Part shown: positions 1 to 37,562 of the stretch, piece after piece
Position numbering within the stretch: position 1 is the first letter of the stretch
Layout: every line of letters starts with the position of its first letter
DNA from: Macrostomum lignano
Lineage: Eukaryota
Length of the DNA: 64,000 nt
Direction: 5' to 3'
NCBI GenBank assembly: GCA_002269645.1
Contig: NIVC01003322.1
Span: 1 to 64,000, forward strand
Program-made: the position numbers and the translations under genes
The notes under the pieces: generated by a model
Told to the model about the DNA's origin: nothing
The model's input: the letters and a program-made list of their open reading frames with translations, nothing else
Database searches by the model: none

Positions 1-1445
1 TCTTCTATTCGCTATTATCGTGACTCTCTTCTCTCTCCTCTCTCTCATCTCATCTCTGCCTACTCTATTAATCTCTCCACTCATTTCTACTCTGTTTTCT
101 ATCATCTCATCTCTCTTCTCTTTTCAATTCTTCTCTTACTCTCTCTCTGACTGATTGAAGATGCCAAATCCATCAAGATCCTCTCGCGAAGCGAAATCCT
201 GTCGTGCAACTGAAACCATCGAAATCCTCTCCGTGAAACTGGACTCCTTCGAAATCCTCTCCTTGAAACTTAAATCATCAAAATCGTCTCCATAAAACAG
301 AAATCAATCATTAATTTATCTCCGCGAAACAGAAATCCTCTCCGTGAAGCTGAACATCATCGAAATCCTCTCCGTGAAACTGAACACCATCGAAATCCTC
401 TCCACGAAACAGAAATCCTCTCCGTCAAAATTAAAACATTGAAATCGTCTCCGCTAAACTGACTCAATCGAATTTTTTGCCGTCAAACAACTCAACTCTC
501 CGGATTCATTGGTTAGGGTTAGGGTTAGGGTTAGGTTAGAACTACGCACAGCTTCGTGTTAAAAGGCACTGATAAAAATATTGAACTAATTGAATCAATT
601 CATTGCGCAACCGATTTCACAGTCAGTCAGTATCAGCCTCAGTAAAGTTAAGAAAAACATTGCGCAATCTAAATCAACCTCCAATACACAGCAGCAGTGA
701 GAAGTTGAACTCCCCCAACTTATCTATTCACGTCTCGCAAAACTGAGTACAATTTTTGCAGAAAGTTAAAAGTATGGAAATAGTTTTTCAATGCTGTGCT
801 TTTTCTTTTCATATTTAAAGCAAACAATTTATATCCCTGAAATCAGCTTTGCAAGTTCTTTCCAGCAATATAATTTTTTCTCTCAAAGTTAAAACTCGAG
901 CAACAGTTTGCGTTTGAAACTTTCTGATTTAAAGCATTGAAATATCGATTGTACGTTCACTGCCTGCTAAAGAGGCCCGCAAGTTTATGCATTGAATTTC
1001 AAGGTTCAACAAAATCACAGGGCTGCCTATTGAAAATTAGAACACAAATCTTTGCGCAATTGTCTATACAGTCAGCCAGTGAGCCAGGTCCGATTGTACA
1101 CAGGCAGCCATTTAGAACGCCCCATCCCCCACTGAGAGAAAATACACTGCAGAGATAGGGAAAAGTTGTGGCGCAATCACTTGAAATTCATGCAAATTTT
1201 CAGCTCCAAGCAGAAAGAGGGACAATTAAGATTATCAAAGGTCAAGACCGCCGTTTTCTGCTTTTTTGAGGATCTTAGAAATTAAAATTTCAGAATTAAA
1301 ATAGCCTATAGCCGACCTCGGATAATTTCCAATCTTCCCATATAAGTTTCAACGCTGAGTTGGCACTATTCAAGGAGGAGTTGTCGAAATGACAGACAGA
1401 CACACAGACAGACAGACAAACAACGCGTCAACTTATATATATAGA
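1..1445 (-). mobile_element. Non-autonomous Helitron unit U1 (3' part outside window)
   Basis: End of CT-rich tract, GAAATCCTCTCCGTGAAACTGAACACCATC minisatellite, TTAGGG tract 511-539, AT-rich core, 5' TC at 1,445. Confidence 0.85.
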
Positions 1446-1449
1446 TATA

Positions 1450-4220
1450 CGAGTGGAACTCCTCCTTCGGAGGAGAAAGGGAAGAACTCCCATCACCGGA
1501 ATTCTATTCCCTGAAATATCCATCAACTGAAATTCCATGTCTTTAACCCTATCTTCCAAATCGTCTCCAAATTCTTTACAAAAATCTTTCAAAGACCATA
1601 GCTCAAAGACTCTTACGTCTCTCATATCTACTCTCTCCTCTCTTCGCTATTATCGTGACTCGCTTCTCTCTCCTCTCTCTCATCTCATCTCTACCCCTAC
1701 TCTCTTATTTATCTCTACTCCCTTATTTATCTCTTCTCCCTCGTCTTTCGTCTGTACCCTATCCTGTCTACTCTCCTATCTTCTATCTTATCTCTCCCCT
1801 TTTCTCTCCTCTCTCATATCTAATCTCTAATCACTTATCTATCGTCTCCGCTCTACTTTCTCTCTTCTTTTTTCTCTCTTCTCTCTGCTCTCATTTCTCG
1901 TATCTCTTATACGCTCTCACCCTCTCCTTTCTTATCTCCCATCTTTCTTCCCTCCTTTCTACTGCATCACCTGTCTCCTCTCTTCTCTTTTCTCTCCTCT
2001 CCATTCTCTCTTCTCTACTCTCATCTCCCCTCATCTCTTCTCTAATCTCTAATCTCTTCTCTCTCTTATTTTCTCACTCATCTCTTTTCTCATTGCATCT
2101 CTCATCTCTCCTCTCTCTCTCTCCTCTCATCTGTACTATCTTTTTTATCTCTTCTCCCAGGTCTTTCAAATTTACTCTCTCCTGTCTCCTCTCTCCCTCG
2201 TCTTTCCTCTCTCATATCTCTTCTCTACTCACTTATATATTCTCTCTCCTCTGCTCCCCTTTTACACTTTCCTATATGCTCTCACTCTCACCCTCCCCTT
2301 TCTTATCTGCTGTTTTTACACTCCTTTCTACCACCTGTCTCCTCTCGTTTCTCTCCTCTCTGCACTCTCATCTTTACCCTCTTCTTTCTCCTCACTACTT
2401 TCTTCTCTTAAATCTCTGATCTCTGATCTTTCATCTCTCTCCTCTCACCTCTCACCTCTCTCCTCTCTTTCCTCTCTTCTATTGCCTCTGTACGCTCTTG
2501 TCCCTCCTTTCTTCTCCATCCTGTCTCCTCTCTGCAATCTCATATCTCCTCTCTCATATCCTCTCCCTTCATCTCCTCTCTCCTCTTCTCTTCTCTCTCC
2601 TTCGTTCCCGCCTTACTTTCCTCTTCTCTCCCATCTGTCATGTCTAATCTCTCCACTCATTTCTACTCTGTTTTCTATCATCTCATCTCTCTTCTCTTTT
2701 CATTCTTCTCTTTACTCTCTTCTCTGACTGATTGAAGATGCCAAATCCATCAAGATCCTCTCCGCGAAGCAGAAATCCTGTCCGTGCAACTGAAAACCAT
2801 CGAAATCTTCTCCGTGAAACTGGACTCCTTCGAAATCCTCTCCTTGAAACTTAAATCCATCAAAATCGTCTCCATAAAACAGAAATCAATCATAAATTAT
2901 CTCCGCGAAACAGAAATCCTCTCCGTGAAGCTGAACATCATCGAAATCCTCTCCGTGAAACTGAACACCTTCGAAATCCTCTCCGTGAAACTGAACACCT
3001 TCGAAATCCTCTCCTTGAAACTTAAATCTATCAAAATCGTCTCCATAAAGCAGAAATCAATCATAAATTTAACTCCGCGAAACAGAAATCCTCTCCGTGA
3101 AGCTGAACATCATCAAAATCCTCTCCGTGAAACTGAGCACCATCGAAATCCTCTCCACGAAACAGAAATCCTCTTTGTCAAAATTAAAACATTGAAATCG
3201 TCTCCGCTAAACTGGACTCAATCAATTTTTTCCGTCAAACAACTCAACTCTCCGGATTCATTGGTTAGGGTTAGGGTTAGGGTTAGAACTACGCACAGCT
3301 TCGTGTTAAAAGGCACTGATAAACTATTGAACTAATTGAATCAATTCATTGCGCAACCGATTTCACAGTCAGTCAGTATCAGTCTCAGTTAAAGTTAACA
3401 AAAACATTGCGCAATCTAATCAACCCTCCAATACAAAGCAACTGACCCCCTTCCTATACACAGCGCCAGTTAGAAGTCGAAACCCCCAACTTTATCTCTC
3501 ACCTCTCGCCAAAATGAGTACAATCTTTGCAGAAAGTTTAAAGTATGGAAATAGTTTTTGCAATGCAGAGCTTTTAGTTTTCATATTTGAAGCAAACAAT
3601 TTATATCCCTGAAATCAGCTTTGCAAGTTCTATCCAGCAATATAAATTTTTTTCTCAAAGTTAAAAACTCGAGCAACAGTTTGCGTTTGAAACTTTCTGA
3701 TTTAAAGCATTGAAATATCGATTGTACGTTCACTGCCTGCTAAAGAGGCCCGCAAGTTTATGCATTGAATTTCAAGGTTCAACAAAATCACAGGGCTGCC
3801 TATTGAAAATTAGAACACAAATCTTTGCGCAATTGTCTATACAGTCAGCCAGTGAGCCAGGGTCCGATTGTACACAGGCAGCCATTTAGAACGCCCCATC
3901 CCCCCACTGGAGAGAAAATACACTGCAGAGATAGGGAAAAGTTGTGGCGCAATCACTTGAAATTCATGCAAATTTTCAGCTCCAAGCAGAAAGAGGGGAC
4001 AATTAAGATTATCAAAGGTCAAGACCGCCGTTTTCTGCTTTTTTGAGGATCTTAGAAATTAAAATTTCAGAATTAAAATAGCCTATAGCCGACCTCGGAT
4101 AATTTCCAATCTTCCCATATAAGTTTCAACGCTGAGTTGCCACTATTCAAGGAGGAGTTGTCGAAATGACAGACACACAGACAGACATACAGACAAACAA
4201 CACGTCAACTTTAGTATATA
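1450..4220 (-). mobile_element. Non-autonomous Helitron unit U2
   Basis: Hairpin/CTCG end at 1,450; CT tract ~1,600-2,728; minisatellite; TTAGGG 3,263-3,286; core; 5' end at 4,220. Confidence 0.85.
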
Positions 4221-6426
4221 CGAGTGGAACTCCTCCTCCGGAGGAGAAAGGGGAAGAACTCCCATCACCGGAATTCTATTCCCTGAAATATCCATCAACT
4301 GAAATTCCATGTCTTTAACCCTATCTTCCAAATCGTCTCCAAATTCTTTACAAAATCTTTCAAAGACCATAGCTCAAAGACTCTCAAGTCTCTCATATCT
4401 CCTCTCTCCTCTCTTTCATCTCATCTCTACCCCTGTTCCCTTATTTATCTCTTCTCCCTCGTCTTTCGTCTGTACCTTCTCCTGTCTTCTGTCTCCTCTC
4501 TTCACTCTTATCTCTCCCTCTTCTCTCCTCTCTCATATGTCATCTCTACTCACTTATCTATCGTCTCTCTTAACCCTCTCTCTCTCTTCTCTTTTCTCTT
4601 CTCTCTGCTCTCATTTCTCATATTTCATATACGCTCTGACACTACTTTCTTGTCTCCCATCTTTCTTCCTCCTTTTCACTATCCCCTGTCTCTTCTCTTC
4701 TCTCTTTTCTATTCTCTCCATTCTCTCTTTTCTCCTTTCCTTGCTCCTTTCATCTCTCTCCTCTCTCCTCACTCTCTTCTCCTTTCGCTTCTCTCTCCTC
4801 TCTCTCCTCTCATCTTTACTACCTTATTTATATCTTCTCCCTAGTCTTTCGTCTGTACTCTCTCCTGTCTCCTCTCTCCCCTCCTCTCTCATCCCTCATC
4901 TCCTCATCTCCTCATCTCACTCTTTCTTTCTCCTCTACTCTCCCCTCTCTTCTATTGCCTCTGTACGCTCTTATCCCTCATCTATTCTCTCTCCTATCAT
5001 CTCCAATCTGTCATGTCTAATCTCTCCACTCAATTATACTCTGTTTTCTATCATCTCTTCTCTCTTCTCTTTTCAGTCTTCTCTTTACTCTCTTCTCTGA
5101 CTGATTGAAGATGCCAAATCCATCAAGATCCTCTCCGCGAAGCAAAAATCCTGTCTGTGCAACTAAAAACCATCGAAATCCTCTCGTGAAACTGGACTCC
5201 TTCGAAATCCTCTCCTTGAAACCTGAATCCATCAAAATTGTTTCCATAAAACAGAAATCAATCATAAATTATCTCCGCGAAACAGAAAGCCTCTCCGTGA
5301 AGCTGAACATGATCGAAATCCTCTCCGTGAAACTGAACACCATGGAAATCCTTTCGTGAAACTGAACATCATCGAAATCCTCTCCACGAAACAGAAATCT
5401 TCTCCGTCAGAATTTAAACATTGAAATCGTCTCCGCTAAACTTGACTTAATCGAATTTTTTCCGTCAAACAACTCAACTCGCCAGATTCATTAGGGTTAG
5501 GGTTAGGGTTAGGGTTAGAACTACGCACAGCTTCGTGTTAAAAGGCACAGATAAAAATATTGAACTAATTGAATCAATTCATTGCGCAACCGATTTCACA
5601 GTCAGTCAGTATCAGCCTCAGGTAAAGTTAACAAAAGATTGCGCAATCTAAATCAACCCTCCAATCCACAGCTGTAGTGAGAAGTTGAACCCTCCCCCCA
5701 ACTTTATCTATTACGTCTTGCAAAACTGAGTACAATATTTGCAAAAAGTTAAAAGTATGGAAATAGTTTTCCAAATGCTGTGCTTTTTCTTTTCATAGTT
5801 AAAACAAACAACTTATATCCCCGAACTCAGCGTTGCAAGATCTTGCCAGCAATATAAGTATCTCCTCTCAAAGTTTAAAACTCGAGGAACAGCTAGCGTT
5901 TGAAACTGTCTGATTTATAGCATTGAAGTATCGAGTGTACGTTCACTGCCTGCTTGCAAGTTGATGCATTGAATTTCAATGTCCAACAAATACACAGGAC
6001 TGCCCATTGATAGGCAGGAAAACTTATCAGTAGCCACATCATTGCGCAATTATCTATAAAGTCAGCCAGTGAGCCAGGGTCCAATTGTACACACGCCGCC
6101 AATGAGAACGCGCCCATTCCCCTACAGGAGAGAAAATGCACTGGCGACATAGGAAAAAGTTGTGGCGTAATCACTCAAAATTTATGCCAATTTTCAGCTC
6201 CGAGCAGAAAGAGGGGACAATTAAGATTATCAAAGGTCAAGACCGCCGTTTTCTGCTTTTTTAGGGATCTTAAAAATTGAAAATGAAAGATTAAAATAGC
6301 CTAAAGCCATCCTCGGAAAATTTGCAGTTTTCCCATATAAGTTTCAACGCTGAGTTGCAAGTATTCTAGGAGGAGTTATCGAACTGACATACAGACAGAC
6401 AAACAACGCGTCAACTTTAGTATATA
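4221..6426 (-). mobile_element. Non-autonomous Helitron unit U3 (near-identical to U6)
   Basis: Same modules; (TTAGGG)4 at 5,491-5,518; spurious ORFs at 4309 and 5893 match those at 18391 and 19967 almost residue for residue. Confidence 0.85.
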
Positions 6427-8016
6427 CGAGTGGAACTCCTCCTTCGGAGGAGAAAGGGGAAGAACTCCCATCACCGGAATTCCATTCCCTGAAATCCATC
6501 AGCTGAAACTCCATGACTTGAATCCCATCTTCCAAATCGTCTCCAAATTCTTTACAAAATTTTGAAAGACCATAGCTCAAAGACTCTCACGTCTCTCATA
6601 TCTCCTCTCTCCTCTCTTCGCTATTATCGTGACTCGCTTCTCTCTCCTCTCTCTCCTCTCATCTCTACCCCTACTCCCTTATTTATATCTTCTCCCTGGT
6701 CTTTCGTCTCTACTCTCTCCTGTCTCATTTCTCCCCTCTTTTCTCCTCTCTTCTCTCTCCCCTCTCCTCCCTCATCTCTCATCCTTCATCTCACTCTTTC
6801 TTTCTTCTCTACTCTCCCCTCTCATCTATTTCCCCTGTACGCTCTTATCCCTCATCTCTATTCTCTCTCCTATCATCTCTCCAAATTCTTTACAAAACCT
6901 TTCAAAGACCATAGCTCAAAGACTCTCACGTCTCTCATATCTCCTCTCTCATATCTCTTCCCTCATCTCACTCTTTCTTTCTCCTCTACTCTCCCCTCTC
7001 TTCTATTTCCTCTGTACGCTCTTATCCGTCATCTATTCTCTTTCCTATTATCTCTCTTGTCTCCCTCTGCTATCTCATATCTCCCCTCTCATCTCCTCTC
7101 TCCTCTTCTCTTCTCTCTCCCTCTTCGTTTCCGCCTTACTCCCCTCTTCTCTTCCATCGGTCATGTCTAATCTATCCACTCATTTCTACTCTGTTTTATA
7201 CCATTTCATGTCTCTTCTCTTTTCGATCTTCTCTTTACTCTCTTTTATGACTGATTGAAGATGCCAAATCTATCAAGATCCTCTCCGCGAAGCAGAAATC
7301 CTCTCCGTGAAACTGAAAACCATTGAAATCCTCTCCGCGAAACAGAAATCCTCTCCGTGAAACTGAAAACCATCGAAATTATCTCTTTAAAACTGGACTC
7401 AATCGAAATTTTCTCCGTCAAAAAGAATAAAATATTAGGATTCATTGGTTAGGGTTATTGTTAGGGTTAGGGTTAGGGTTAGAGCTACACACAGCTGCGT
7501 GTTTAAATAAAAAATTGAGCCAATTGAATCAATTGATAGCGCAACCGATTTCAAAGTCAGTCAGTATCAGTCTCAGTTAAAGTGAACAAAAAGATTGCGC
7601 AATTTAAATCAACCCTCCAGTACACAGAGACCGGCCCCTTTTCAATACGCAGTGGCAGTTAGAAATTGAACCCGGGTGTTGGGGCATTGAACTAAAAATG
7701 AGTACAATCTTTGCAGAAAGCTAAAAGTATGGAAATAGTTTTTGTATGCTGTGCTTTTAGTCTTTATATTTAAAGCAAACAATTTATATCCTCGAACTCA
7801 GCGTTGCAAGATCTTTTCAGCAGTATAAGTCTCTTCTCTTAAAGTTTAGAACTCGAAGAGCAGTTAGCGTTTGAAAGTTCCCGTTTTAAAGCATTGAAAT
7901 ATCGAGTATACGTTCACTGCCTGCCAAAGAGGCTCGCAAGTTTATTCATTCATTACACAGGCCGGCTATTACACAGGGCAGCCTATTAAAAGGCACAGAT
8001 AATGAAACAAATTGAT
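6427..8016 (-). mobile_element. Non-autonomous unit U4, lacking its 5' end (deletion junction at ~8,016)
   Basis: Hairpin end at 6,427; CT tract with internal duplication (6,545/6,885); TTAGGG 7,447-7,482; core breaks at AAACAAATTGATG. Confidence 0.8.
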
Positions 8017-8058
8017 GTCTCTATCTTCTCATGTCTCATGAGAGATGTCTCAAATTGA

Positions 8059-10597: not shown

Positions 10598-10606
10598 CGA
10601 GGCCAA

Positions 10607-10623
10607 CTCCTCCTCCGGAGGAG
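10607..10623 (-). other. Helitron 3' terminator hairpin (also at 1459-1475, 4230-4246, 6436-6452, 18312-18328, 31184-31200 and the other junctions)
   Basis: CTCCTCC-(TCC/TTC/GAT)-GGAGGAG: perfect 7-bp stem with variable 3-nt loop, 9 nt from the 3' terminus. Confidence 0.85.
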
Positions 10624-11559
10624 AAAGGGGAAGAACTCCCATCACCGGAATCCCATAACCGGAATTCCATTCCCTGAAATCCATCAGCTGAATCTCATGA
10701 GCTAAGTCAGTCAGAGTAAGAGTCACACAAAGCATTTATGACGTAATCAATTTATCAGGCAGTCGGTGTTAGGCTCATTATAAATTAACTATAAGGTTAC
10801 GCAATCCAAATCAACCCTCCAATACGTACACAGCGACCTACACTTTCAGTACACAACGCGCAATTAGAAATCTAACTAACGCATCCATTCCTATCAGGTA
10901 GTTATACTTCTGTGTCTCCGTTAAATATATTAAAAAACTAATTCAAAGACATCATTGGGGGGTGCGCAGGAAACGACCAAATTAAAGGGATAGTATAAGC
11001 ACGGGTCATTGGCTAAGTATTGCATAATTGTTAATTCAGAATTTATGTGCATGTAATACCTTTTCATTATTTATGATGTTTACTAATAGCCTATGAATCG
11101 ACTGGCTCGTTTGTATTCTGAATCCTGCGCACCCCGAGTACAGTATGGCATATATTTTTTATTAAAGCTCTTTCCAGCAATAAATTGTGTTATAATAGGG
11201 GTGCAAGCAAAGGTGGGGAGAAAGTGGAAGAAACCTAATAACTTAACTGACAATACTAAATGTGTGAATTGGCCGTTAATATTACACGTGTAACAAAATA
11301 CATAAATAATTACGAACGGCTACTTTGTACATTAAAAAGATTCAGAAAAAATAAGTACGGCAATTGAATCTAAATTGCTTGGAGCCTGAGCATTCTTAGA
11401 AGCTCCCCTTATATGAGCAACTCTATCAAGAAACAGTTTTGCCACTACCTAATAGTTTATGTTAAAAGATTTATCAGTCTCATTATTTGTCGCACTCTCA
11501 ATTTGGCACTCAATGTGGCATAAGTATTTTCGCTCGTGAATTCGTCACTCTCAAAATTT

Positions 11560-11895
11560 ATGACTCATAATTTGTCTCTCATAATTTATCACTCTCATAA
11601 TTCGTCACACTCAATATGACATCCTGAATTTTGCACCCTCATAAGTATTATCGCTCTCAAATTTGTCACTCATAATTTTTCACTCCCTCTCATGATTAAC
11701 CACTCCTTCTCATAATTTTTCACCCACTCGCTCCCATAATTTGTCACTCACTCTCATAATTTGTCACTTACTCTCATAATTTGTCACTTACTCTCATAAT
11801 TTGTCACTCACTCTCATAATTTGTCTCTCACTCTCATAATTTTTCTCTCACTCTCATAATTTATCACTCACTCTTATAATATGTCACTCATATTA
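11560..11895. repeat. 20-bp minisatellite downstream of the RepHel stop codon
   Basis: Tandem CTCTCATAATTTGTCACTCA units, degenerating toward lower coordinates. Confidence 0.9.
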
Positions 11896-11935
11896 TATTT
11901 CTGTCATTTGAGTCTGTTAATTCAATTGAGTCTAA

Positions 11936-23038: not shown

Positions 23039-25453
23039 AGTGGAACTCCTCCTTCGGAGGAGAAAGGGGAAGAACTCCCATCACCGGAATTCCATTCCCT
23101 GAAATATCCATCAACTGAAATTCCATGTCTTGAACCCTATCTTCCAAATCGTCTCCAAATTCTTTACAAACCTTTCAAAGACTATAGCTCAAAGACTCTT
23201 ACGTCTCTCATATCTCCTCTCTCCTCTCTTCGCTATTATCTTGACTCTCTTCTCTCTCCTCTCTCTCTTCTCATCTCTACTCCCTTTATCTATCTCTTCT
23301 CCCTCGTCTTTCGTCTCTACTTTCTCCTTTCTCCTCTTCTCTCTCATCTCTCATCTGTACTCTTTTTCTTTCTCCTCTACTCTCTCCTCTTCTATTTCCT
23401 CTGTACGCTCTTATCCCTCCTCTCTTCTTTCTCCTCTTATCTCTCCTGTCTCCTCTTTGCTATCTTATATCTCCCCTCCCATCTCCTCTCTTCTTTTCTC
23501 TTCTCTCTCCTTCGTTCCCGCCTTACTCCCCTCTTCTCTCCCATCTGGCATGTCTAATCTCTCCACTCATTTCTACTCTGTTTTCTATCATCTCATCTCT
23601 CTTCTCTTTTCATTCTTTTCCTTACTCTATTCTCTGACTGATTGAAGATGCCAAATACATCAAGATCCTCTCCGCGAAGCAGAAATCCTGTTCGTGCAAC
23701 TGAAAACCATCGAAATCCTCTCCGTGAAACTGGACTCCTTCGAAATCCTCTCCTTGAAACCTGAATCCATCAAAATTGTTTCCATAAAACAGAAATCAAT
23801 CATAAATTATCTCAGCGAAACAGAAAGCCTCTCCGTGAAGCTGAACATGATCGAAATCCTCTCCGTGAAACTGAAGACCATGGAAATCCTTTCGTGAAAC
23901 TGAACATCATCGAAATCCTCTCCACGAAACAGAAATCTTCTCCGTCAGAATTTAAACATTGAAATCGTCTCCGCTAAACTTGACTTAATCGAATTTTTTC
24001 CGTCAAACAACTCAACTCGCCAGATTCATTAGGGCTAGGGTTAAGGTTAGGGTTAGGGTTAGGGTTAGAACTACGCACAGCTTCGTGTTAAAAGGCACTG
24101 ATAAAAATATTGAATTAATTGAATCAAATCATTGCGCAACCGATTTCACAGTCAGTCAGTATCAGTCTCAGTTAAAGTTAACAAAAACATTGCGCAATCT
24201 AAATCAACCCTCCAATACACAGCAGCAGTGAGAAGTTGAACCCTCCCCCAACTTTATCTATTACGTCTCGCAAAACTGAGTACAATTTTTGCAGAAAGTT
24301 AAAAGTATGGAAATAGTTTTTTAAATGCGGTGCTTTTTCTTTTCATATTTAAAGCAAACAACTTATATCCCTAAACTCAGCGTTGCAAGATCTTTCCAGC
24401 AATATAAGTCTCTCCTCTCAAAGTTTAAAACTCAAGGAGCAGTTAGCGTTTGAAATTTACCGATTTCCCGACTGCTTGCCTGAGAGGCTCGCAATTTTGT
24501 ACATTGAATTTCACTGCCAAGCTAATACACAGGGCCGATAATAAAAAAGCTAACCAATTGAATCAATTGATTGCGCAATATATTTCTGTGTTAGTCAGTA
24601 TAAGTCTCAGTTAAAGTTAACAAAAAGTTTGCGCAATCTAATCAACCCTCCAATACAAAGCAACTGACCCCCTTCCTATACACAGCGCCAGTTAGAAGTC
24701 GAAACCCCCAACTTTATCTCTCACCTCTCGCCAAAATGAGTACAATCTTTGCAGAAAGTTTAAAGTATGGAAATAGTTTTTGCAATGCAGAGCTTTTAGT
24801 TTTCATATTTGAAGCAAACAATTTATATCCCTGAAATCAGCTTTGCAAGTTCTTTCCAGCAATATAAATTTTTTCTCTCAAAGTTAAAAACTCGAGCAAC
24901 AGTTTGCGTTTGAAACTTTCTGATTTAAAGCATTGAAATATCGATTGTACGTTCACTGCCTGCTAAAGAGGCCCGCAAGTTTATGCATTGAATTTCAAGG
25001 TTCAACAAAATCACAGGGCTGCCTATTGAAAATTAGAACACAAATCTTTGCGCAATTGTCTATACAGTCAGCCAGTGAGCCAGGGTCCGATTGTACACAG
25101 GCAGCCATTTAGAACGCCCCATCCCCCCACTGGAGAGAAAATACACTGCAGAGATAGGGAAAAGTTGTGGCGCAATCACTTGAAATTCATGCAAATTTTC
25201 AGCTCCAAGCAGAAAGAGGGGACAATTAAGATTATCAAAGGTCAAGACCGCCGTTTTCTGCTTTTTTGAGGATCTTAGAAATTAAAATTTCAGAATTAAA
25301 ATAGCCTATAGCCGACCTCGGATAATTTCCAATCTTCCCATATAAGTTTCAACGCTGAGTTGCCACTATTCAAGGAGGAGTTGTCGAAATGACACACACA
25401 CACACACACACACAGACAGACAGACAAACAACACGTCAACTTTAGTATATATA
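23039..25453 (-). mobile_element. Non-autonomous unit U8 with short CT tract and duplicated core
   Basis: TTAGGG variants 24,029-24,068; core restarts at ~24,552. Confidence 0.8.
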
Positions 25454-25663
25454 CAGACAAACAACGCGTCAACTTTAGTATATATAGATAGATAGATAGA
25501 AAATTTCAGAATTAAAATAGCCTATAGCCGACCTCGGATAATTTCCAATCTTCCCATATAAGTTTCAACGCTGAGTTGCCACTATTCAAGGAGGAGTTGT
25601 CGAAATGACAGACAGACACACAGACAGACAGACAAACAACGCGTCAACTTTAGTATATATAGA
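25454..25663 (-). mobile_element. Two stacked Helitron 5'-end stubs (47 bp and 163 bp)
   Basis: The 5'-terminal sequence repeats at 25,454-25,500 and 25,501-25,663 without body or 3' hairpin. Confidence 0.8.
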
Positions 25664-25665
25664 TA

Positions 25666-26096
25666 GAAGTGGAACTCCTCCTTCGGAGGAGAAAGGGGAA
25701 GAACTCCCATCACCGGAATTCCATTCCCTGAATTATCCATCAACTGAAATTCCATGTCTTGAACCCCATCTTCCAAATCGTCTCCAAATTCTTTACAAAC
25801 CTTTCAAAGACCATAGCTCAAAGACTCTTACGTCTCTCATATCTACTCTCTCCTCTCTTCGCTATTATCGTGACTCTCTTCTCTCTCCTCTCTCTCATCT
25901 CATCTCTACCCCTACTTCCTTATTTATCTCTTCTCCCTCGTCTTTCGTCTGTACCCCCTCCTGTCTCCTCTGTTCTCTGTTCTATCACATCTGTATTCTT
26001 CACTTCTGTCTCCTGTCTCCTCTCTTCTCTCTTATCTCTCCTTCTTCTCTTCTCTCTCATATGTCATCTCTACTCACTTATCTATCGTCTCTCTTA

Positions 26097-26157
<61 letters not shown>

Positions 26158-28433
26158 CTCTCTGCTCTCATTTCTTATATCTCATATACGGTCTCAGACT
26201 CTACTTTCTTGTCTCCCATCTTTCTTTCCTCCTTTCCACTACCCCCGTCTCTTCTCTTCTCTCTTTTCTAATCTCTAATCTCTTCTCTCTTATGTTCTCA
26301 CTCATCTCTTCTCCTCGCATCTCTCATCTCTCCTCTCCTCACTACTTCCCTCTCTTAACTCTCTCATCTCTGATTTTTCATCTCTCTCCTCTCTCCTCTC
26401 GCTCTTTTCCTTTCGCTTCTCTCTCCTCCCTCTCCTCTCATCTCTACTACTTTATTTATATCTTCTCCCTCGTCTTTCGTCTCTACTCTCGTCTGTCTCC
26501 TTTCTCCCCTTTTTTCTCCTCTTTTCTCTCTTCTCTCTCCGCTCCTCTCTCATCTCTCATCCCTCATCTCACTCTTTCTTTCTCCTCTACTCTCCCCTCT
26601 CTTCTATTTCCTCTGTACGCTCTTATCCTTCATCTATTCTCTCTCCTATTATCTCTCTTGTCTCCCTTTGCTATCTCATATATCCACTCTTATCTCCTCT
26701 CTCCTCTTCGCTTTTCTGTCCTTCGTTCCCGCCTTAATCCCTCTTCTCTCCCATCTGTCATGTCTAATCTCTCCACTCATTTCTACTCTGTTTTCTACCA
26801 TCTCATATCTCTTCTCTTTTCATTCTTCTTTTTATTCTCTTCTCTGACTGATTGAAGATGCCAAATCAATCAAGATCCTCTCCGCGAAGCAGAAATCCTG
26901 TCCGTGCAACTGAAAACCATCGAAATCCTCTCCGTGAAACTGAAGAGAATCGAAATCCTCTCCGCGAAACAGAAATCCTCTCCGTGAAACTGAAAACCAT
27001 CGAAATTCTTTCTTTTAAACTGGACTCAATCGAAATTTTCTCCGTCAAAAAGAATAAATATCAGGATTCATTGGTTATTGTTAAGGGTTAGGGTTAGGGT
27101 TAGAGCTACACACAGCTGCGTGTTCAAATAAAAAATGAACCAATTGAATCAATTGATTGCGCAACCGATTTCACAGTCAGTCAGTATCAGTCTCAGTTAA
27201 AGTTAGCAAAAAAATTGCGCAATCTAAATCAACCCTCCAGTACACAGAGACCGACCCCTTTTCAATACGCAGTGGCAGTTAGAAATTGAACCTCAAACTT
27301 TTGGGGGCATTGAACAAAAAATGAGTACAATCTTTGCATAAAGCTAAAAGTATGGAAATGGTTTTTTGAAACATTTTATATCCTCGAACTCAGCGTTGCA
27401 AGATCTTTTCAGCAGTATAAGTCTCTTCTCTTAAAGTTTAGAACTCGAAGAGCAGTTAGCGTTTGAAAGTTCCCGTTTTAAAGCATTGAAATATCGAGTA
27501 TACGTTCACTGCCTGCCAAAGAGGCTCGCAAGTTTATTCATTCATTACACAGGCCGGCTATTACACAGGGCAGCCTATTGAAAGGCACAGATAATAAAAC
27601 AAAATTGATGGCGCAACTGATTTCACAGTATGTCAGTATCAGTCTCAGTTACAGTTAACAAAAAGATTGCGCAATCTAAATCAACCCTCCAATACACAGC
27701 GCCCGACCGCCTTCCACTACGCAGTGGCAATTAGCAATTGAACCCCCCAAATTTATCTCTGACCTATCGCAAAAATAAGTACAATCTTTGCAGCAAGTTA
27801 AAAGTAAAAGTAATAAAATCGTTTTTTGAATGCTGTGCTTTTAATTTTTACAGTTAAAGCAAACAACTTATATCCCTGAACTCAGCGTTGCAAGATCTTT
27901 CCAGCAATATAAGTCTCTCCTCTCAAAGTTCAAAAATCGAGCAACAGTTAGCATTTGAAACTTTCTGATTTAAAGCATTGAAATATCGAGTGTACGTTCA
28001 CTGCCTGCTAGAGAGGCTCGCAAATTGATGCATTGAATTTCACTGTCCGCCAGTTAGCTAGGGTCCAAGTGTACACACGCCGCCACTGAGAACGCTCCTA
28101 TCCCCCACTGGAGAGAAAATACACTGCCAAGTTAGCAAAATTTTATGGCGCAATCACTTAAAATTCATGCAAATTTTCAGCTCCAAGCAGAAAGAGGGGA
28201 CAATTAAGATTATCAAAGGTCAAGACCGCCGTTTTCTGCTTTTTTGAGGATCTTAGAAATTAAAATTTCAGAATTAAAATAGCCTATAGCCGACCTCGGA
28301 TAATTTCCAATCTTCCCATATAAGTTTCAACGCTGAGTTGCCACTATTCAAGGAGGAGTTGTCGAAATGACACACACACACACACACACACAGACAGACA
28401 GACAAACAACACGTCAACTTTAGTATATATAGA
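25666..28433 (-). mobile_element. Non-autonomous unit U9 (duplicated core)
   Basis: (CT)n run at ~26,100-26,150; TTAGGG 27,073-27,103; core restarts at ~27,601; 5' TC at 28,433 joined exactly to CTCG. Confidence 0.85.
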
Positions 28434-31132
28434 CGAGTGGAACTCCTCCTTCGGAGGAGAAAGGGGAAGAACTCCCATCACCGGAATTCCATTCCCTGAA
28501 ATCCATCAGCTGAAACTCCACTTGAATCCCATCTTCCAAATCGTCTCCAAATTCTTTACAAAATCTTTGAAAGACCATAGCTCAAAGACTCTCACGTCTC
28601 TCATATCTCCTCTCTCTTCTATTCGCTATTATTGTGACTCTCTTCTCTCTCCTCTCTCTCTCATCTCATCTCTACCCGTACTCCCTTATTTATGTTTTAT
28701 CCCTCGTCTTTCGTCTGTACCCTCTCCTGTCTCTTGTCTCCTCTCTTCTCTCATATCTCTCCTCTTCACTTCTGTCTCCTGTCTTCTCTCTTCTCTCTTA
28801 TCTCTCCCTCTTCTCTCCTCTTTTATATGTCATCCCTATTCACTTATCTATCGTCTCTCTTAACCCTCTCTCTCTTCTCTTTTCTTTCCTCTCTGCTCTC
28901 ATTTCTCATATCTCATATACGCTCTCACACTCCACTTACTTGTCTCCAATCTTTCTTTCCTCCTTTCCACTTTTCCCTGTCTCTTCTCTTCTCTCTTTTC
29001 TATCCTCTCCATTCTCTCTTTTCTCCTCCCTTGCTCCTTTTATCTTCTCCCCTCTCTTCTCTAATCTCTTCTCTCTTCTCTCTTATGTTCTCACTCATCT
29101 CTTTTTATCGCATCTCTCATCTCTCCTCTCCTCACTACTTTCCTCTCTTAACTCTCTTATCTATTTCATCTCTCTCCTCTCTCCTCTTTCTCTTCTCCTC
29201 TCGCTTCTTCTCTCGCTTCTCTCTCCTATCTCTCCTCTCATCTCTACTACCGTATTTATATCTTCTAACTGGTCCTTCGTCTCTACTCTCTCCTTTCTCC
29301 TTTCTCCCCTCTTTTCTCCTTTCTTGTCTCTCCTGTCTCCCCTCCTCTCTCATCCCTCATCCCCTCATCTCACTCTTTCTTTCTCCTCTACTCTCCCCTC
29401 TCTTCTATTTTCTCTGTACGCTCTTATCCCTAATCTATTTTCTCTCCTCTCTCCTCTTTTCTACTCTCTCCCTCTTCGTTCCCGCCTAAATCCCCTCTTC
29501 TCTCCAATCTGTCATGTCTAATATCTCCACTTATTTCTACTCTGTTTTCTATCATCTCATCTCTCTTCTGCTTTCATTCTTCTCTTTACTCTTTTCTCTG
29601 ACTGATTGAAGATGCCAAATCCATCAAGATCCTCTCCGCGAAGCAGAAATCCTGTCCGTGCAACTGAAAACCATCGAAATTCTCTCTTTTAAACTGGACT
29701 CAATCGAAATTTTCTCCGTCAAAAAAAATAAATATCAGGATTCATTGGTTAGGGTTATTGTTAGGGTTAGGGTTAGGGTTAAAGCTACACAGCTGCGTGT
29801 TCAAATAAAAATTGAACCAATTGAATCAATTGATTGCGCAACCGATTTCTCAGTCAGTCAGTATCAGTCTCAGTTAAAGTTAACAAAAAGATTGCGCAAT
29901 CTAAATCAACCCTCCAGTACACAGAGACCGACCTCTTTTCAATACGCAGTAGCAGTTAGAAATTGAACGCCGAACTGTTGGGGGCATTGAACCAAAAAAT
30001 GAGTACAATCTTTGCATAAAGCTAAAAGTATGGAAATAGTTTTTTTGATGCTGCTCTTTTAGTCTTTACATTTATAGCAAACAATTTATATCCTCGAACT
30101 CAGCGTTGCAAGATCTTTTCAGCAGTATAAGTATCTTCTCTTAAAGTTTAGAACTCGAAGAGCAGTTAGCGTTTGAAAGTTCCCGTTTTAAGGCATTGAA
30201 ATATTGCGTGTACGTTCACTGCCTGCCAAAGAGGCTCGCAAATTTATTCATTCATTACACAGGCTGGCTATTACACAGGGCAGCCTATTGAAAGGCACAG
30301 ATAATAAAACAAATTGATGGCGCAACCGATTTCACAGTCAGTCAGTATCAGTCTCAGTTAAAGTTAAGAAAAACATTGCGCAATCTAAATCAACCCTCCA
30401 ATACACAGCGCCCGACCGCCTTCCACTACGCAGTGGCAATTAGCAATTGAACCCCCCAAATTTATCTCTGACCTATCGCAAAAATAAGTACAATCTTTGC
30501 AGCAAGTTAAAAGTAAAAGTAATAAAATCGTTTTTTGAATGCTGTGCTTTTAATTTTTACAGTTAAAGCAAACAACTTATATCCCTGAACTCAGCGTTGC
30601 AAAATCTTTCCAGCAATATAAGTCTCTCCTCTCAAAGTTCAAAAATCGAGCAACAGTTAGCATTTGAAACTTTCTGATTTAAAGCATTGAAATATCGAGT
30701 GTACGTTCACTGCCTGCTAGAGAGGCTCGCAAATTGATGCATTGAATTTCACTGTCCGCCAGTTAGCTAGGGTCCAAGTGTACACACGCCGCCACTGAGA
30801 ACGCTCCTATCCCCCCACTGGAGAGAAAAAACACTGCCAAGTTAGCAAAATTTTATGGCGCAATCACTTAAAATTCATGCAGATTTTCAGCTCCAAGCAG
30901 AAAGAGGGGACAATTAAGATTATCAAAGGTCAAGACCGCCGTTTTCTGCTTTTTTGAGGATCTTAGAAATTAAAATTTCAGAATTAAAATAGCCTATAGC
31001 CGACCTCGGATAATTTCCAATCTTCCCATATAAGTTTCAACGCTGAGTTGGCACTATTCAAGGAGGAGTTGTCGAAATGACAGACAGACACACAGACAGA
31101 CAGACAAACAACGCGTCAACTTTAGTATATAC
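28434..31132 (-). mobile_element. Non-autonomous unit U10 (core near-identical to U9)
   Basis: TTAGGG 29,747-29,781; core restarts at ~30,311; 5' end abuts a (GATA)n run at 31,133-31,170. Confidence 0.85.
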
Positions 31133-31171
<39 letters not shown>

Positions 31172-31174
31172 GAG

Positions 31175-32566
31175 AGAGGCCAACTCCTCCGATGGAGGAG
31201 AAAGGGGAAGAACTCCCATCACCGGAATTCCATTCCCTGAACTCCATCAGCTAGATCCCAAGACCCGAATATCATCATCTAACTGTTCTCCAAAACCATC
31301 AAAATCCTCTCCATGAAACTGAACACCATCGAAATCCTCTCCGCAAAACAGAAATCCTCTCCGTGCAACTGAAAACCATCGAAATCCTCTCCGCGAAACA
31401 GAAATCCTCTCCGTGAAACTGAAAACCATTGAAATCCTCTCCGCGAAACAGAAATCCTCTCCGTGAAACTGAACACCATCGAAATTCCCTCTATTAAACT
31501 GGACTCAGTCGAATTTTTCTCCGTCAAAAAGAATAAAATATTAGGATTCATTTGTTAGGGTTAGGGTTAGAGCTACACACAGCTGCGTGTTAAAAGGCAC
31601 TGGTAAAAAATTTGAACCAATTGAATCAATTGATTGTGCAACCAATTGATTGTGCAACCGATTTCTCCGTCAGTCAGTATCAGTCTCAGTTAAAGGTACC
31701 AAAAAGATGGCGCAATCTAAATCAACCGTCCAATGCACAGCGACCAACCCCCTTCCAATACGCAGTGGCAGCTAGAAATTAACACCCTCCCTAACTGCTG
31801 GGGGGTCGATCATACCCCATTGAACCCCCCAAAATGAGTTACAATCTTTGCAAAAAGTTAAAAGTATGGAAGTTTTTTGAATGCCGTGCTTTTAGTTTTC
31901 ATATTTAAAGCAAACAACTTATATCCCCGAACTCAGCGTTGGAAGACCTTTCCAGCAATATAAGTCTCTACTCTCAAAGTTTAAAACTCGAGGAACAGTT
32001 GGCGTTTGAAATTTACCGATTTCCCAACTGCTTGCTAGAGAAGCTCGCAAGTTTATTCTTAAATTTCAGTGCCCAGCCAATAACACAGGGCTGCGTCTTG
32101 AAAGACGCCAATAATAAAACCAATTGAATCTCGACACAGTCTATCTGTTTACACTGTACAACTGCTATGTACACTCAGCCCAAGCCCAACCCCCGTTCTG
32201 GGGGAAGCATTAAATTTAACTCAACCCCCCCAACACGCGGGGGTTTTATTTGCATTGAACGCAGAACACGCGCACCCACCACCCCACAAATACACAGCGA
32301 CCCGCGGGCGGAGGTTGGGGTGGCTATTTTTACAAACAGACTGCCAACTCTCTTACTGGAAAGACAGAAGGGCCAAAGAAGGTTAAAAGCAGTTTTCTGT
32401 TTTTTTAGGGATGTTAAAATGTGAAAATTAAAAATTAAAATAGCCTAAAGCCTGATCCGGAAAATTTTCTGTTTTCCCATATAAGTTTCGACGCTGACTT
32501 GCCAGTTGTCTAGGAGAAAAATCGCAACACAAACACACAATCATCGCACCAGTTTTAGTATTAAGA
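31175..32566 (-). mobile_element. Non-autonomous unit U11 (no CT tract; termini of the autonomous type)
   Basis: GAGGCCAACTCC 3' end as at 10,600; minisatellite follows the terminal module almost directly; TTAGGG 31,555-31,570; 5' region matches 17,860-18,301. Confidence 0.82.
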
Positions 32567-32743
32567 TTTTCCCATATAAGTTTCAACGCTGACTTGTCAG
32601 TAGTCGAGGAGAAAAATTGCAACACACATACAGACAAACAAACAACGCACCACTTTTAGTATTAAGATTGCAACACAAAGACAAACAGACAAACAGACAA
32701 ACATCGCACCACTTTTAGTATTAAGAAGAGAGAAGAGAAGAGA
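32567..32743 (-). mobile_element. Two stacked Helitron 5'-end stubs at the outer edge of the array
   Basis: TTTTAGTATTAAGA occurs three times (ending at 32,566, 32,667 and 32,726); outermost A|TC at 32,744/32,743. Confidence 0.8.
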
Positions 32744-37277: not shown

Positions 37278-37324
37278 TAATTCGAGGCACTGCGGCTTCG
37301 CGGTGTGGCTTCTTAAGTCCCTGG

Positions 37325-37562
37325 CGTCATGAATCGCGTGCTTGCCGGCGTCTCCGCACCCACCGAGTGGACCGTAGCGCACAACGTGGCAATTTTGAAG
37401 AAAGCCAAGACGACACAGAAAAAAGCTCATCGAGGCATCTTACTGATGTCCTATACTGCGAAACTTTCGACCGTCTGCATTCAGTGCTAGACCCCTACTT
37501 GCGTTATAAGCAGAATGGATTCCGGCCGCAGCGCGGTACAGTGACGCAGATCCTTGCACTTC
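37325..37562 (+). pseudogene. Fragment of non-LTR retrotransposon (LINE, RTE-like) reverse transcriptase
   Basis: Reads VMNRVLAGVSAPTEW..ILKK..HRGILLMSYTAKL, then after a frameshift DRLHSVLDPYLRYKQNGFRPQRGTVTQILAL, the start of the LINE RT domain (RGISL / QxGFR motifs). Confidence 0.8.

What the first reader, a model, noticed from the sequence alone, without database searches (positions are those of the whole stretch)
1..32743. A 33-kb Helitron concatemer that contains its own transposase-encoding copy
Seen: about 11 non-autonomous units and one RepHel-bearing unit are all in one orientation and joined 3'-to-5' with no flanking host DNA. At 20,503/20,502 and 28,434/28,433 the minus strand reads hairpin-TTCCA-CTCG|TCTATATA, an exact 3' end to 5' TC fusion. 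Known: Helitron rolling-circle intermediates have this 3'-to-5' junction, and Helitron-derived tandem arrays occur in several animals. Inference: the locus is a satellite-like array grown by rolling-circle replication or repeated self-targeted insertion, with its engine embedded in it. It mixes different family members rather than repeating one monomer.
Basis: partly seen in the sequence, partly recalled or inferred. Interest (0 to 1): 0.85.

Follow-up and report, generated by a model that had tools for sequence, protein, structure and literature searches.

The report
Head-to-tail Helitron transposon array, flatworm
The first 32.7 kb of this Macrostomum lignano (flatworm) window is a real one-orientation chain of Helitron transposons joined end to end, including a nearly intact transposase-bearing copy. 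The same arrangement recurs at ten other loci of the genome, so it is a new example of a known phenomenon that points to new copies landing at the ends of resident ones.

Summary
On the minus strand, positions 32743 to 1 hold 10-11 non-autonomous Helitron units plus one 7.7-kb RepHel unit. All lie in one orientation. Each 3' hairpin-CT(CG) end is followed within 0-45 nt by the next 5' end. The quoted CTCG|TCTATATA junctions are exact, but they are only 2 of 10; the others are CTCG|TATATAC or carry TC/TCTA/TA microsatellites.

The RepHel gene (17557 to 11936) has six GT/GC-AG introns and intact HUH, Tyr and Walker motifs. It also has a 1-bp frameshift at about 16328, so this copy is probably disabled.

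The organism is Macrostomum lignano. In 10 of 11 other RepHel loci the gene again sits in or at the end of such an array. Counting the window, 70 of 70 3' ends lie on the RepHel strand and 69 of 70 abut a 5' end. A 9.1-kb RepHel unit is 99.7-99.9% identical at eight loci, and identity breaks exactly at its termini while the neighbouring units differ.

I conclude that the arrays grow mainly by repeated, oriented integration at the ends of resident copies, followed by block duplication and deletion. A single rolling-circle concatemer does not fit. Tandem Helitron arrays are already known, so this is a new member of a known kind.

The parts
1..32743 (-). Head-to-tail Helitron array. The 5' boundary with host DNA is at 32743. 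The 3' side runs off the window at position 1.
31175..32743 (-). U1. Three stuttered 5' ends: stubs at 32743-32668 and 32667-32567, then the body from 32566. It is of autonomous-like subtype, with the first 420 nt 92% identical to U7. Its 3' end is CTCCTCCATCGGAGGAGTTGGCCTC.
   Evidence: The 3' end is 100% identical to the L001 3' end.
28434..31174 (-). U2, a non-autonomous unit of 2.7 kb. It is preceded by a (TCTA)n tract of about 45 nt.
25668..28433 (-). U3, a non-autonomous unit. Its 5' junction is CTCG|TCTATATA (28434/28433). Its 3' end lacks the CG.
23037..25667 (-). U4, a non-autonomous unit with two 5' stubs (25667-25501 and 25500-25454) in front of the full 5' end.
20503..23036 (-). 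U5, an 'X'-type unit. Its 3' 1.4 kb is 99% identical to U10.
18303..20502 (-). U6, a 'Y'-type unit, 99% identical to U9. Its 5' junction is CTCG|TCTATATA (20503/20502).
10599..18302 (-). U7, the RepHel-bearing unit (7.7 kb). Its 5' end is TCTTCTTAATACTAAAACTGG. Its 3' end is the hairpin followed by TTGGCCTCG. Only the last 100 nt or so, plus a weak match at 10734-10871, are shared with the other units.
11936..17557 (-). RepHel gene. Introns lie at 16217-15970, 15330-15223 (GC-AG), 14383-14297, 13693-13607, 13304-13184 and 12795-12707, and there are more in the N-terminal part. The spliced core of 1216 aa has no stop codon. The motifs LPHVHALLW (HUH), AIKYVVKYITKG (two Tyr) and DAPGGTGKT (Walker A) are intact.
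   Evidence: The core is 96.7% identical, without gaps, to residues 376-1591 of the intact paralogue P0243.
16326..16330 (-). 1-bp deletion (CCAGA-GCTTC where L001 and L002 read CCAGACGCTTC). It shifts the frame between the N-terminal region and the Rep domain.
11669..11890 (-). 20-bp minisatellite of about 11 copies in the 3' untranslated part of U7.
6427..10598 (-). U8, a 4.2-kb chimeric unit. Its first 2540 nt match U10 at 99-100%. It then jumps into the middle of a U2/U3-like unit, so a 3' end and a 5' end have been deleted. It carries two telomere-like blocks.
4221..6426 (-). U9, a 'Y'-type unit, 99% identical to U6.
1450..4220 (-). U10, an 'X'-type unit. The U9|U10 junction (CTCG|TATATAC) is the 'empty-site' counterpart of U6|U7|U8.
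1..1449 (-). U11, a 'Y'-type unit cut off by the window start.
20503..20529 (-). Example of the 3' terminus: a 7-bp stem CTCCTCC/GGAGGAG with a 3-nt loop, then TTCCA and CTCG. The same motif occurs at 31200, 28460, 25692, 23063, 18329, 10624, 6453, 4247 and 1476.

Best explanation
The locus is a mosaic array of canonical (HLE1-type) Helitrons of Macrostomum lignano. Family members have a 5' T(C/T/A)...ATACTAAA end. Their 3' end is a 7-bp-stem hairpin followed 9 nt later by CTCG.

The array was built mainly by repeated, strand-specific integration of new copies exactly at, or a few nucleotides inside, the termini of copies already present. Non-autonomous subfamilies and RepHel-bearing copies both integrated this way. 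Each event creates a CTCG|T(C) junction and keeps one orientation.

The likely chemistry is that of the element's own HUH/two-tyrosine transposase. That enzyme already nicks at these termini. I infer that a resident end serves as a preferred target for strand transfer of an excised copy.

Afterwards the array was remodelled by homology-driven events. In this window these were a multi-unit block duplication (X-Y dimers U5-U6, U8-U9, U10-U11), a deletion that fused two units into U8, and microsatellite change at junctions. The embedded RepHel unit U7 is one such inserted unit. It carries one frameshift, so mobilisation today would depend on intact paralogues elsewhere.

Shown: the anatomy, the orientation, the junctions, recurrence across the genome, the recent transposition of RepHel units into arrays, and the block duplication. 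Inferred: that resident termini are the integration target, and the strand-transfer chemistry.
For: - Anatomy and termini.
- RepHel domains and motifs, with no endonuclease and no terminal inverted repeats.
- Organism and paralogues.
- Recurrence: 10 of 11 other RepHel loci have arrays. Counting the window, 70 of 70 3' ends lie on the RepHel strand and 69 of 70 are followed within 50 nt by a 5' end.
- Recent transposition into arrays: the 9.1-kb RepHel unit is 99.7-99.9% identical in L003-L007 and L009-L011. Flanks differ (80-93% over short anchored stretches; only L010 and L011 are alike). Identity breaks exactly at TTAATAC... and at ...CTCG. The downstream neighbour is a family 5' end in 8 of 8 loci aligned.
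- Mosaic make-up: the closest relative of 41 of 59 units is at another locus. Only 8 of 48 adjacent pairs are 95% or more alike.
- Filled/empty pair in the window: U6 matches U9 and the 5' part of U8 matches U10 at 99-100%. U7 is present between the first pair only.
- Block duplications with edges inside units: 1686-4310 matches 8059-10684 (99%), and 4027-6697 matches 18126-20775 (96.5%).
- Host flanks fit A|T(C)...CTCG|T: the window at 32743, L004 and L006 on the 5' side, and L001 on the 3' side.
- Literature: self-insertion and multiple 5' termini are described for Fusarium Helitrons (PMC5148889). Precise TC/CTAG circle junctions are described for Helraiser (PMC4778049).
Against: - No direct evidence that a resident terminus is the cleavage target.
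- Most internal junctions are G|T, not the canonical A|T target.
- The 5' dinucleotide varies: TT 16, TA 11 and TC about 25 of 69 junctions. This blurs where the element begins.
- Runs of near-identical 1.2-kb monomers (L003_1-3, L007_1-3, L008_1-3) fit local tandem amplification better than independent insertions.
- The 5' stubs are never matched by the missing remainder after the next 3' end, so they are not simple in-situ nested insertions.
- The U9|U10 'empty site' could in principle be a precise recombinational loss of U7.
- The sample of loci was chosen through RepHel proteins. It therefore cannot say what fraction of arrays contain RepHel.
- Some loci may be haplotypic or homeologous duplicates, L010 and L011 being the clearest case.
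Confidence: 0.6

Rival explanations
1. True rolling-circle concatemer. Replication of one circular Helitron intermediate without termination produced a multi-copy linear product that integrated as an array, and the units diverged afterwards.
For: - CTCG|TC is exactly the circle junction reported for Helraiser (PMC4778049).
- The literature invokes this mechanism for tandem Helitrons (PMC9248874, PMC11934779).
- Runs of 3-4 monomers of 1.2 kb at 99.5-99.7% identity, with identical junctions, occur in L003, L007 and L008.
Against: - In the window no adjacent units are alike. The best adjacent pair scores 0.77, and units range from 2.2 to 7.7 kb across different subfamilies.
- Nearest relatives lie three units apart or at other loci.
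- The RepHel unit is 99.8% identical across loci while its neighbours differ.
- Junction sequences differ from one junction to the next.
Confidence: 0.1
2. Satellite-like amplification only. One or a few chance adjacent insertions were expanded by unequal crossing-over or segmental duplication, with no targeting by the transposase.
For: - The window shows a higher-order X-Y pattern and multi-unit duplications whose boundaries lie inside units.
- U8 is a deletion fusion of two units.
- Runs of the 1.2-kb monomer occur at other loci.
Against: - It cannot explain why near-identical 9.1-kb RepHel units sit in at least seven different unit neighbourhoods with identity ending exactly at the termini.
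- It cannot explain why 41 of 59 units have their closest relative at another locus.
- It cannot explain why 69 of 70 ends abut precisely.
Confidence: 0.15
3. Microsatellite targeting rather than end targeting. The family prefers TA-, TCTA- or CT-rich microsatellites as integration sites. Its own 5' ends carry such tracts, so elements pile up there as a by-product.
For: - Every host/5' boundary seen has a CT-rich tract of 10-70 nt: the window at 32743, L002, L004, L006 at 4602 and L007.
- Junctions carry TC, TCTA or TA tracts.
- The stutters TCTTAA|TCTTAA|TCTTAATAC in L007 and (TCTA)n in the window and L006 fit insertion at A|T a few nucleotides inside a resident 5' end.
Against: - 27 of 69 junctions are plain CTCG|TTAATAC or CTCG|TATATAC with no extra microsatellite.
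- The many other microsatellites in the right half of the window carry no Helitron.
- Strict orientation is not explained by a symmetric (TA)n target.
Confidence: 0.12
4. Assembly artefact: repeats mis-joined or collapsed by the assembler.
For: - The region is highly repetitive.
- The window's own reads are not available.
- The 1-bp deletion in RepHel could be a consensus error.
Against: - The same architecture occurs on ten other contigs of GCA_002269645.1, with different unit orders.
- The units within the window are diverged enough (78-99%) to be assembled unambiguously.
- Both a host boundary and internal junctions are present.
Confidence: 0.03

Closest known systems
Tandem (head-to-tail) Helitron arrays: Helibat in Myotis lucifugus (Pritham & Feschotte 2007, as cited in PMC9248874), Helitron-1_DPe on the D. 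pseudoobscura Y (PMC9248874) and centromeric Helitrons of plants (Xiong, Dooner & Du 2016, as cited in PMC5148889 and PMC11934779)
   Same: Whole or truncated Helitrons lie in one orientation, with the 3' end joined directly to the next 5' end. The authors interpret them as products of the rolling-circle lifestyle.
   Different: Those arrays are described as repeats of one element and are attributed to rolling-circle concatemers. Here adjacent units are mostly different subfamilies. The arrays include autonomous copies, and the evidence favours serial insertion at resident ends. The host, a free-living flatworm, is new.
Fusarium/Metarhizium Helitrons with multiple 5' termini and self-insertion (Chellapan et al. 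2016, PMC5148889)
   Same: Short duplicated 5' ends (under 200 bp) precede a single 3' end. One element is inserted 2 bp upstream of another's 5' terminus. Three copies lie in tandem in Metarhizium. The authors propose a self-insertion model.
   Different: Those are isolated cases in fungi. Here the pattern is pervasive: 70 ends at 12 loci, with arrays longer than 30 kb and multiple recent RepHel insertions.
Meloidogyne centromeric holo-clusters with autonomous and non-autonomous Helitrons (PMC13404089, 2026)
   Same: Autonomous and non-autonomous HLE1 Helitrons are embedded together in long repeat arrays. TC-containing microsatellites mark the 5' sides, and hairpins and the CT.. motif mark the 3' sides.
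   Different: There the Helitrons are interspersed with a 19-bp-box centromeric satellite, and the autonomous copies lie between the arrays. Here the units abut one another directly and no separate satellite is involved. A centromeric role was not tested here.
Helraiser circular intermediate (Grabundzija et al. 2016, PMC4778049)
   Same: The 3' tetranucleotide is joined precisely to the 5' TC. A 3' hairpin lies close to the end. The transposase is a RepHel with an HUH motif and two tyrosines.
   Different: That junction is on an episomal circle and has CTAG. Here the junction is chromosomal, the tetranucleotide is CTCG, and the 5' dinucleotide varies (TC, TT or TA).
Prokaryotic HUH transposons whose target resembles their own end (IS91, IS200/IS605); from general knowledge, not tested here
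   Same: The proposed logic is the same: the transposase's own cleavage motif doubles as the integration target. This favours insertion next to an existing end and the formation of tandem copies.
   Different: The protein families and hosts differ. For Helitrons this target rule is my inference, not an established property.

Membership tests
Canonical Helitron (Helitron1 / HLE1) | RepHel protein: a Rep domain with an HUH motif and two catalytic tyrosines, fused to a PIF1-like SF1B helicase | tested here: met
   Pfam finds Helitron_like_N (5e-52), PIF1 (2e-32 and 1e-21) and Pif1_2B. The motifs LPHVHALLW, AIKYVVKYITKG and DAPGGTGKT are present in the spliced 1216-aa core. The core is 96.7% identical to the intact 1591-aa paralogue.
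Canonical Helitron (Helitron1 / HLE1) | 5' terminus T(C/T) | tested here: met
   5' ends begin TC at host boundaries (the window at 32743, L004, L006). The young RepHel unit begins TTAATAC or TCTTAATAC. 11 of 69 junctions read CTCG|TA, so the rule is loose.
Canonical Helitron (Helitron1 / HLE1) | 3' terminus CTRR | tested here: not met
   The 3' end is CTCG at 58 of the 70 ends and CT at the other 12. The third base is C, not a purine. This is a variant tetranucleotide. Its position and the T that follows it are as in Helitrons.
Canonical Helitron (Helitron1 / HLE1) | Short hairpin about 10 nt upstream of the 3' end | tested here: met
   A 7-bp stem CTCCTCC/GGAGGAG with a 3-nt loop ends 9 nt before the terminus. 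The loop varies (GAA, GGA, AGA, AGC, ATC) while the stem is kept across 70 ends.
Canonical Helitron (Helitron1 / HLE1) | No terminal inverted repeats | tested here: met
   The inverted-repeat search of unit U6 finds no pair linking the two termini.
Canonical Helitron (Helitron1 / HLE1) | Insertion between host A and T without target-site duplication | tested here: inconclusive
   The 5' host flank ends in A in the window, L004 and L006. The 3' flank begins with T in L001. No empty host site was available to check for absence of a duplication. Internal junctions are G|T.
Helentron / Helitron2 | C-terminal AP-endonuclease domain (Helentron), asymmetric terminal inverted repeats, and insertion between T and T | tested here: not met
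   No endonuclease domain is found in the window protein pieces or in the full-length paralogue. No terminal inverted repeats are found.
Tandem Helitron array (as in bat, Drosophila Y and plant centromeres) | Two or more elements in the same orientation with the 3' end directly joined to the next 5' end | tested here: met
   There are 10 junctions in the window, and 69 of the 70 3' ends across window and loci abut a 5' end.
Tandem Helitron array formed as a rolling-circle concatemer | Units within an array derive from one template, so they are near-identical to each other and closer to each other than to copies elsewhere | tested here: not met
   In the window the best adjacent pair scores 0.77. 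Across the loci, 8 of 48 adjacent pairs reach 0.95, all of them the 1.2-kb family. 41 of 59 units have their closest relative at another locus.
Autonomous (active) Helitron copy | Uninterrupted RepHel reading frame | tested here: not met
   A 1-bp deletion at about 16328, relative to L001 and L002, shifts the frame. The rest of the gene is open after removal of the GT/GC-AG introns. A sequencing error cannot be excluded.

The most novel reading that the evidence does not exclude
Eukaryotic Helitron RepHel may use the termini of resident family members as its preferred integration target, since these are its own nick sites. Any copy would then become a landing pad, and arrays would seed themselves and grow in one orientation. 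On this reading, the TC, TCTA and TCTTAA stutters at junctions, and the CT-rich tract at each array's 5' edge, are footprints of successive integrations a few nucleotides inside the previous 5' end.
Probability: 0.35. Interest if true: 0.65.

Novelty: new member of a known kind. Interest (0 to 1): 0.45.

Why it matters
Tandem Helitron arrays are usually explained loosely as rolling-circle concatemers. This flatworm family is unusually clean natural material for testing that idea. It is young, with RepHel units 99.8% identical. It has an annotated intact 1591-aa transposase. It has many arrays whose neighbouring units differ.

If integration really is directed to resident ends, three things would follow:
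- It would explain how Helitrons seed satellite-like, centromere- or subtelomere-associated arrays in other animals and plants.
- It would give Helitrons a target rule parallel to that of bacterial HUH transposons.
- It would make M. lignano, a transgenic-capable model, a place to test the rule.

For annotation, it warns that more than 30 kb of one-strand repeat here consists of transposon copies, not a classical satellite. It also shows that each unit carries a short telomere-like (CCCTAA)n block.

Tried and rejected
- Helentron/Helitron2 classification: rejected. There is no endonuclease domain and there are no terminal inverted repeats.
- RepHel as a heavily decayed pseudogene with six or more broken ORFs: rejected. 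The breaks are canonical short AT-rich GT/GC-AG introns that match the spliced M. lignano proteins. Only one true frameshift remains.
- 5' stubs as simple nested insertions: rejected. The expected remainder of the interrupted unit never follows the next 3' end.
- U9|U10 as a product of recombinational deletion of U7: considered. The tail variants (loop GGA with TTCCA) are the opposite of what a U6-tail by U7-tail crossover predicts. The evidence is only two small variants, so this is kept as a caveat.
- Related copies in the right half of the window that might show solo insertions: none. There is no homology. The TCCACTCG match at 37371 is a chance match in unrelated sequence.
- L002 as a clean solo insertion that would give both flanks: only the 5' end is recognisable. 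Homology stops inside the helicase and no 3' terminus was found.
- CT-rich tract as a fixed part of the element: rejected. It differs or is absent among loci that carry 99.8%-identical RepHel units.
- Pritham & Feschotte 2007 could not be opened. It is cited only through papers that quote it.
- Pfam on the ORFs inside non-autonomous units and on ORFs in the right half gave nothing, apart from a weak PUB-domain hit at 62498-63094.

Full report
**1. What is in the sequence**

The two quoted junctions are exact. The minus strand reads ...CTCCTCCGAAGGAGGAG TTCCA CTCG|TCTATATA... at 20503/20502 and at 28434/28433.

A tolerant search for the hairpin-plus-tail finds ten copies between 1 and 32743. 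All are on the minus strand and none on the plus strand. Each is followed within 0-45 nt by the conserved 5' motif ATACTAAA(G/A)....

This divides the region into units U1-U11:
- ten non-autonomous units of 1.4-4.2 kb;
- one 7.7-kb unit, U7 (18302 to 10599).

The array starts precisely at 32743, next to unrelated DNA (...AAAATTTTAATA|TCTCTTCTCTTCTCTCTTCTTAATACTAAAAG). It runs off the window at position 1. The remaining 31 kb of the window has no homology to it.

The junctions are not uniform:
- two are CTCG|TCTATATA;
- four are CTCG|TATAT...;
- three lack the CG (CT|TCTATC.., CT|TATATAC, CT|TCTTCTTAATAC);
- one has about 45 nt of (TCTA)n.

Four truncated 5' ends ('stubs' of 47-167 nt) precede the full 5' ends of U1 and U4.

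**2. The transposase gene**

Pfam finds Helitron_like_N, PIF1 and Pif1_2B on the minus strand between 17557 and 11936.

The gene looks fragmented into ORFs, but the breaks are short AT-rich introns with GT-AG boundaries (one is GC-AG). They coincide with the splice junctions of annotated M. lignano proteins. Removing six introns gives a 1216-aa open frame. It has intact HUH (LPHVHALLW), two-tyrosine (AIKYVVKYITKG) and Walker A (DAPGGTGKT) motifs. It is 96.7% identical, without gaps, to residues 376-1591 of an intact 1591-aa paralogue.

One lesion remains. A 1-bp deletion at about 16328, relative to two other copies, shifts the frame ahead of the Rep domain. This copy is therefore probably non-functional, unless the deletion is a consensus error.

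There is no endonuclease domain and there are no terminal inverted repeats. The 3' hairpin has a 7-bp stem and a 3-nt loop, and ends 9 nt before the terminus. This is a canonical-type Helitron with a variant 3' tetranucleotide, CTCG rather than CTRR.

**3. Organism and other loci**

The best protein matches are from Macrostomum lignano. The helicase part is 99% identical to BOX15_Mlig032255g8. I fetched eleven RepHel loci from assembly GCA_002269645.1.

Ten of the eleven show the same architecture. The exception is L002, a copy inside an innexin intron. Over the window plus the loci:
- 70 of 70 recognisable 3' ends lie on the RepHel strand;
- 69 of 70 are followed within 50 nt by a 5' end.

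The one exception (L001 at 11390) gives the 3' host junction CTCG|T. Host junctions on the 5' side (the window, L004, L006) read A|TC.

The junction classes over all loci are CTCG|TTAATAC (16), CTCG|TATATAC (11) and CTCG|TCTTAATAC (10). CTCG|TCTAT.. is rarer, and there is a tail of longer TC/TCTA/TA tracts.

**4. How the arrays grow**

Four results bear on mechanism.

(a) Recent transposition into arrays.
- A 9.1-kb RepHel unit is 99.7-99.9% identical in L003-L007 and L009-L011.
- Its flanks are different units. Anchored flank alignments are short and 80-93% identical; only L010 and L011 resemble each other.
- Alignments of the boundaries show identity starting exactly at TTAATACTAAAACTGG and ending exactly at GGAGTTGGCCTCG.
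- These are therefore recent transposition events. Each landed directly against family termini.
- Downstream the neighbour is a family 5' end in 8 of 8 loci aligned.
- Upstream it is a family 3' end (L003, L005, L006, L008, L010, L011), a 5' stub (L004) or host DNA with a CT-rich tract (L007).

(b) Mosaic make-up. Of 59 complete units, 41 have their closest relative at another locus. Of 48 adjacent pairs, only 8 are 95% or more alike, and all eight belong to one 1.2-kb family. Arrays are mosaics, not repeats of one template.

(c) A filled/empty pair inside the window. U6 matches U9 at 99%, and the first 2.5 kb of U8 matches U10 at 99-100%. U9|U10 are directly joined (CTCG|TATATAC), whereas U7 sits between U6 and U8.

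(d) Homology-driven remodelling in the window.
- Duplicated blocks cross junctions and end inside units: 1686-4310 matches 8059-10684 at 99%, and 4027-6697 matches 18126-20775 at 96.5%.
- This gives an X-Y higher-order pattern.
- U8 is a deletion fusion of two units.

Together these favour serial, oriented integration at resident ends, followed by block duplication. They argue against a single rolling-circle concatemer for this locus. The short runs of near-identical 1.2-kb monomers at other loci may well be local tandem amplification, by rolling circle or by unequal exchange.

**5. Proposed mechanism (inferred)**

RepHel nicks its own 5' and 3' termini. If an enzyme carrying an excised strand uses the nick site of a resident copy instead of a random A|T site, strand transfer would join the two ends precisely. 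That would give a CTCG-to-T(C) junction in the same orientation, whatever subfamily the incoming copy belongs to.

Stutters such as TCTTAA|TCTTAA|TCTTAATAC (L007) and (TCTA)n (window 31175, L006) would be footprints of integrations at A|T a few nucleotides inside a resident 5' end. The same may hold for the CT-rich tract at each array's 5' edge.

That reading is not secure. The solo L002 copy has the longest CT tract, and slippage is an obvious alternative.

**6. Comparison with what is known**

Tandem Helitrons have been reported in:
- Myotis, Drosophila, rice and maize (as summarised in PMC5148889);
- the D. pseudoobscura Y (PMC9248874);
- plant centromeres and Hydractinia subtelomeres (PMC11934779);
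- Meloidogyne centromeric clusters, together with autonomous copies (PMC13404089).

Multiple 5' termini and self-insertion are described in Fusarium (PMC5148889). The precise end-to-end junction is that of the Helraiser circle (PMC4778049). I found no paper describing Helitron arrays in Macrostomum.

The finding is thus a new member of a known kind. It has unusually clear evidence for insertion at resident ends.

**7. Verdict**

- Observation: confirmed.
- Interpretation: partly supported. It is an array, a mix of family members, and has an embedded RepHel. Self-targeted insertion is favoured. A strict concatemer is not, and the local transposase gene is frameshifted.
- Interest: moderate (0.45).
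- Limits: no read-level validation. The loci were sampled through RepHel, so the share of arrays that contain RepHel is untested. The targeting chemistry is inferred.

Noticed in passing
window 513-536, 3265-3282, 5491-5514, 7461-7484, 9640-9657, 19565-19588, 22032-22055, 24041-24064, 27082-27105, 29761-29778, 31555-31572 (minus strand); also in 10 of 11 loci: Every non-autonomous unit carries a short telomere-like block, (CCCTAA)3-5, on the element's sense strand. U8 has two blocks and the RepHel unit has none. Chance expectation is zero. These are interstitial telomeric repeats spread by a Helitron family.
   Followed up: partly
window 2772-3168, 5132-5442, 9117-9545, 19248-19516, 23712-23980, 26867-27044, 31302-31485: Each non-autonomous unit contains an internal array of a repeat of about 30 bp (GAAATCCTCTCCGTGAAACTGAAAACCATC on the plus strand), with higher-order periods of 111-172 bp. 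This resembles the satellite-like repeats carried by Helitron or Helentron derivatives in other animals.
   Followed up: no
window 32725-32743; L002 6110-6180; L004 ~5087-5096; L006 ~4585-4601; L007 ~8750-8792: A CT-rich tract of 10-70 nt precedes the first 5' end at every boundary between host (or other non-family) DNA and a 5' end that I examined. At most internal junctions it is only 0-5 nt. It differs between loci that carry 99.8%-identical RepHel units, so it is not carried by the element.
   Followed up: partly
window 12000-17500 compared with the rest of 1-32743: RepHel exons are about 58% G+C. The introns and the non-autonomous units are about 40% G+C, and the units have a strong strand skew (GC skew down to -0.58 on the plus strand).
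   Followed up: no
window 35730-37278, 45276-45455, 46141-46349, 46710-47504, 48109-48684, 48953-49583, 50013-50970, 51520-52438: The non-Helitron half of the window is dense in unrelated minisatellites, with periods of 20, 27, 22, 26, 171, 31, 27 and 28 bp and up to 78 copies. Several create long spurious ORFs, for example 48832-50748.
   Followed up: no
window 62498-63094 (+): This 198-aa ORF has a weak match to PUB / SPATA2 PUB-like domains (E = 1e-5, below the Pfam cut-off). It may be an exon of a host gene.
   Followed up: no
L001 11454-12134 (minus strand): A gene with a weak DNA_pol_B_2 match lies immediately downstream of the last Helitron 3' end of that array. It could be a fragment of a Polinton/Maverick-like element.
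   Followed up: no
L002 6386-6407 and window ~18110 (minus strand): The 5' region of autonomous-type copies, about 200 nt from the 5' end, contains a sequence resembling the 3' terminal hairpin (CCTCTCCAGTGGAGGAGTTGCA). It could act as a premature termination signal.
   Followed up: no
L005 18470-18505: One junction has about 30 nt of non-family sequence (TATATATATCAATGCAGAATTTTCATACG) between a 3' CTCG and the next 5' TCTTATAC. It is the only internal junction of the 69 with a spacer that looks like ordinary DNA.
   Followed up: no
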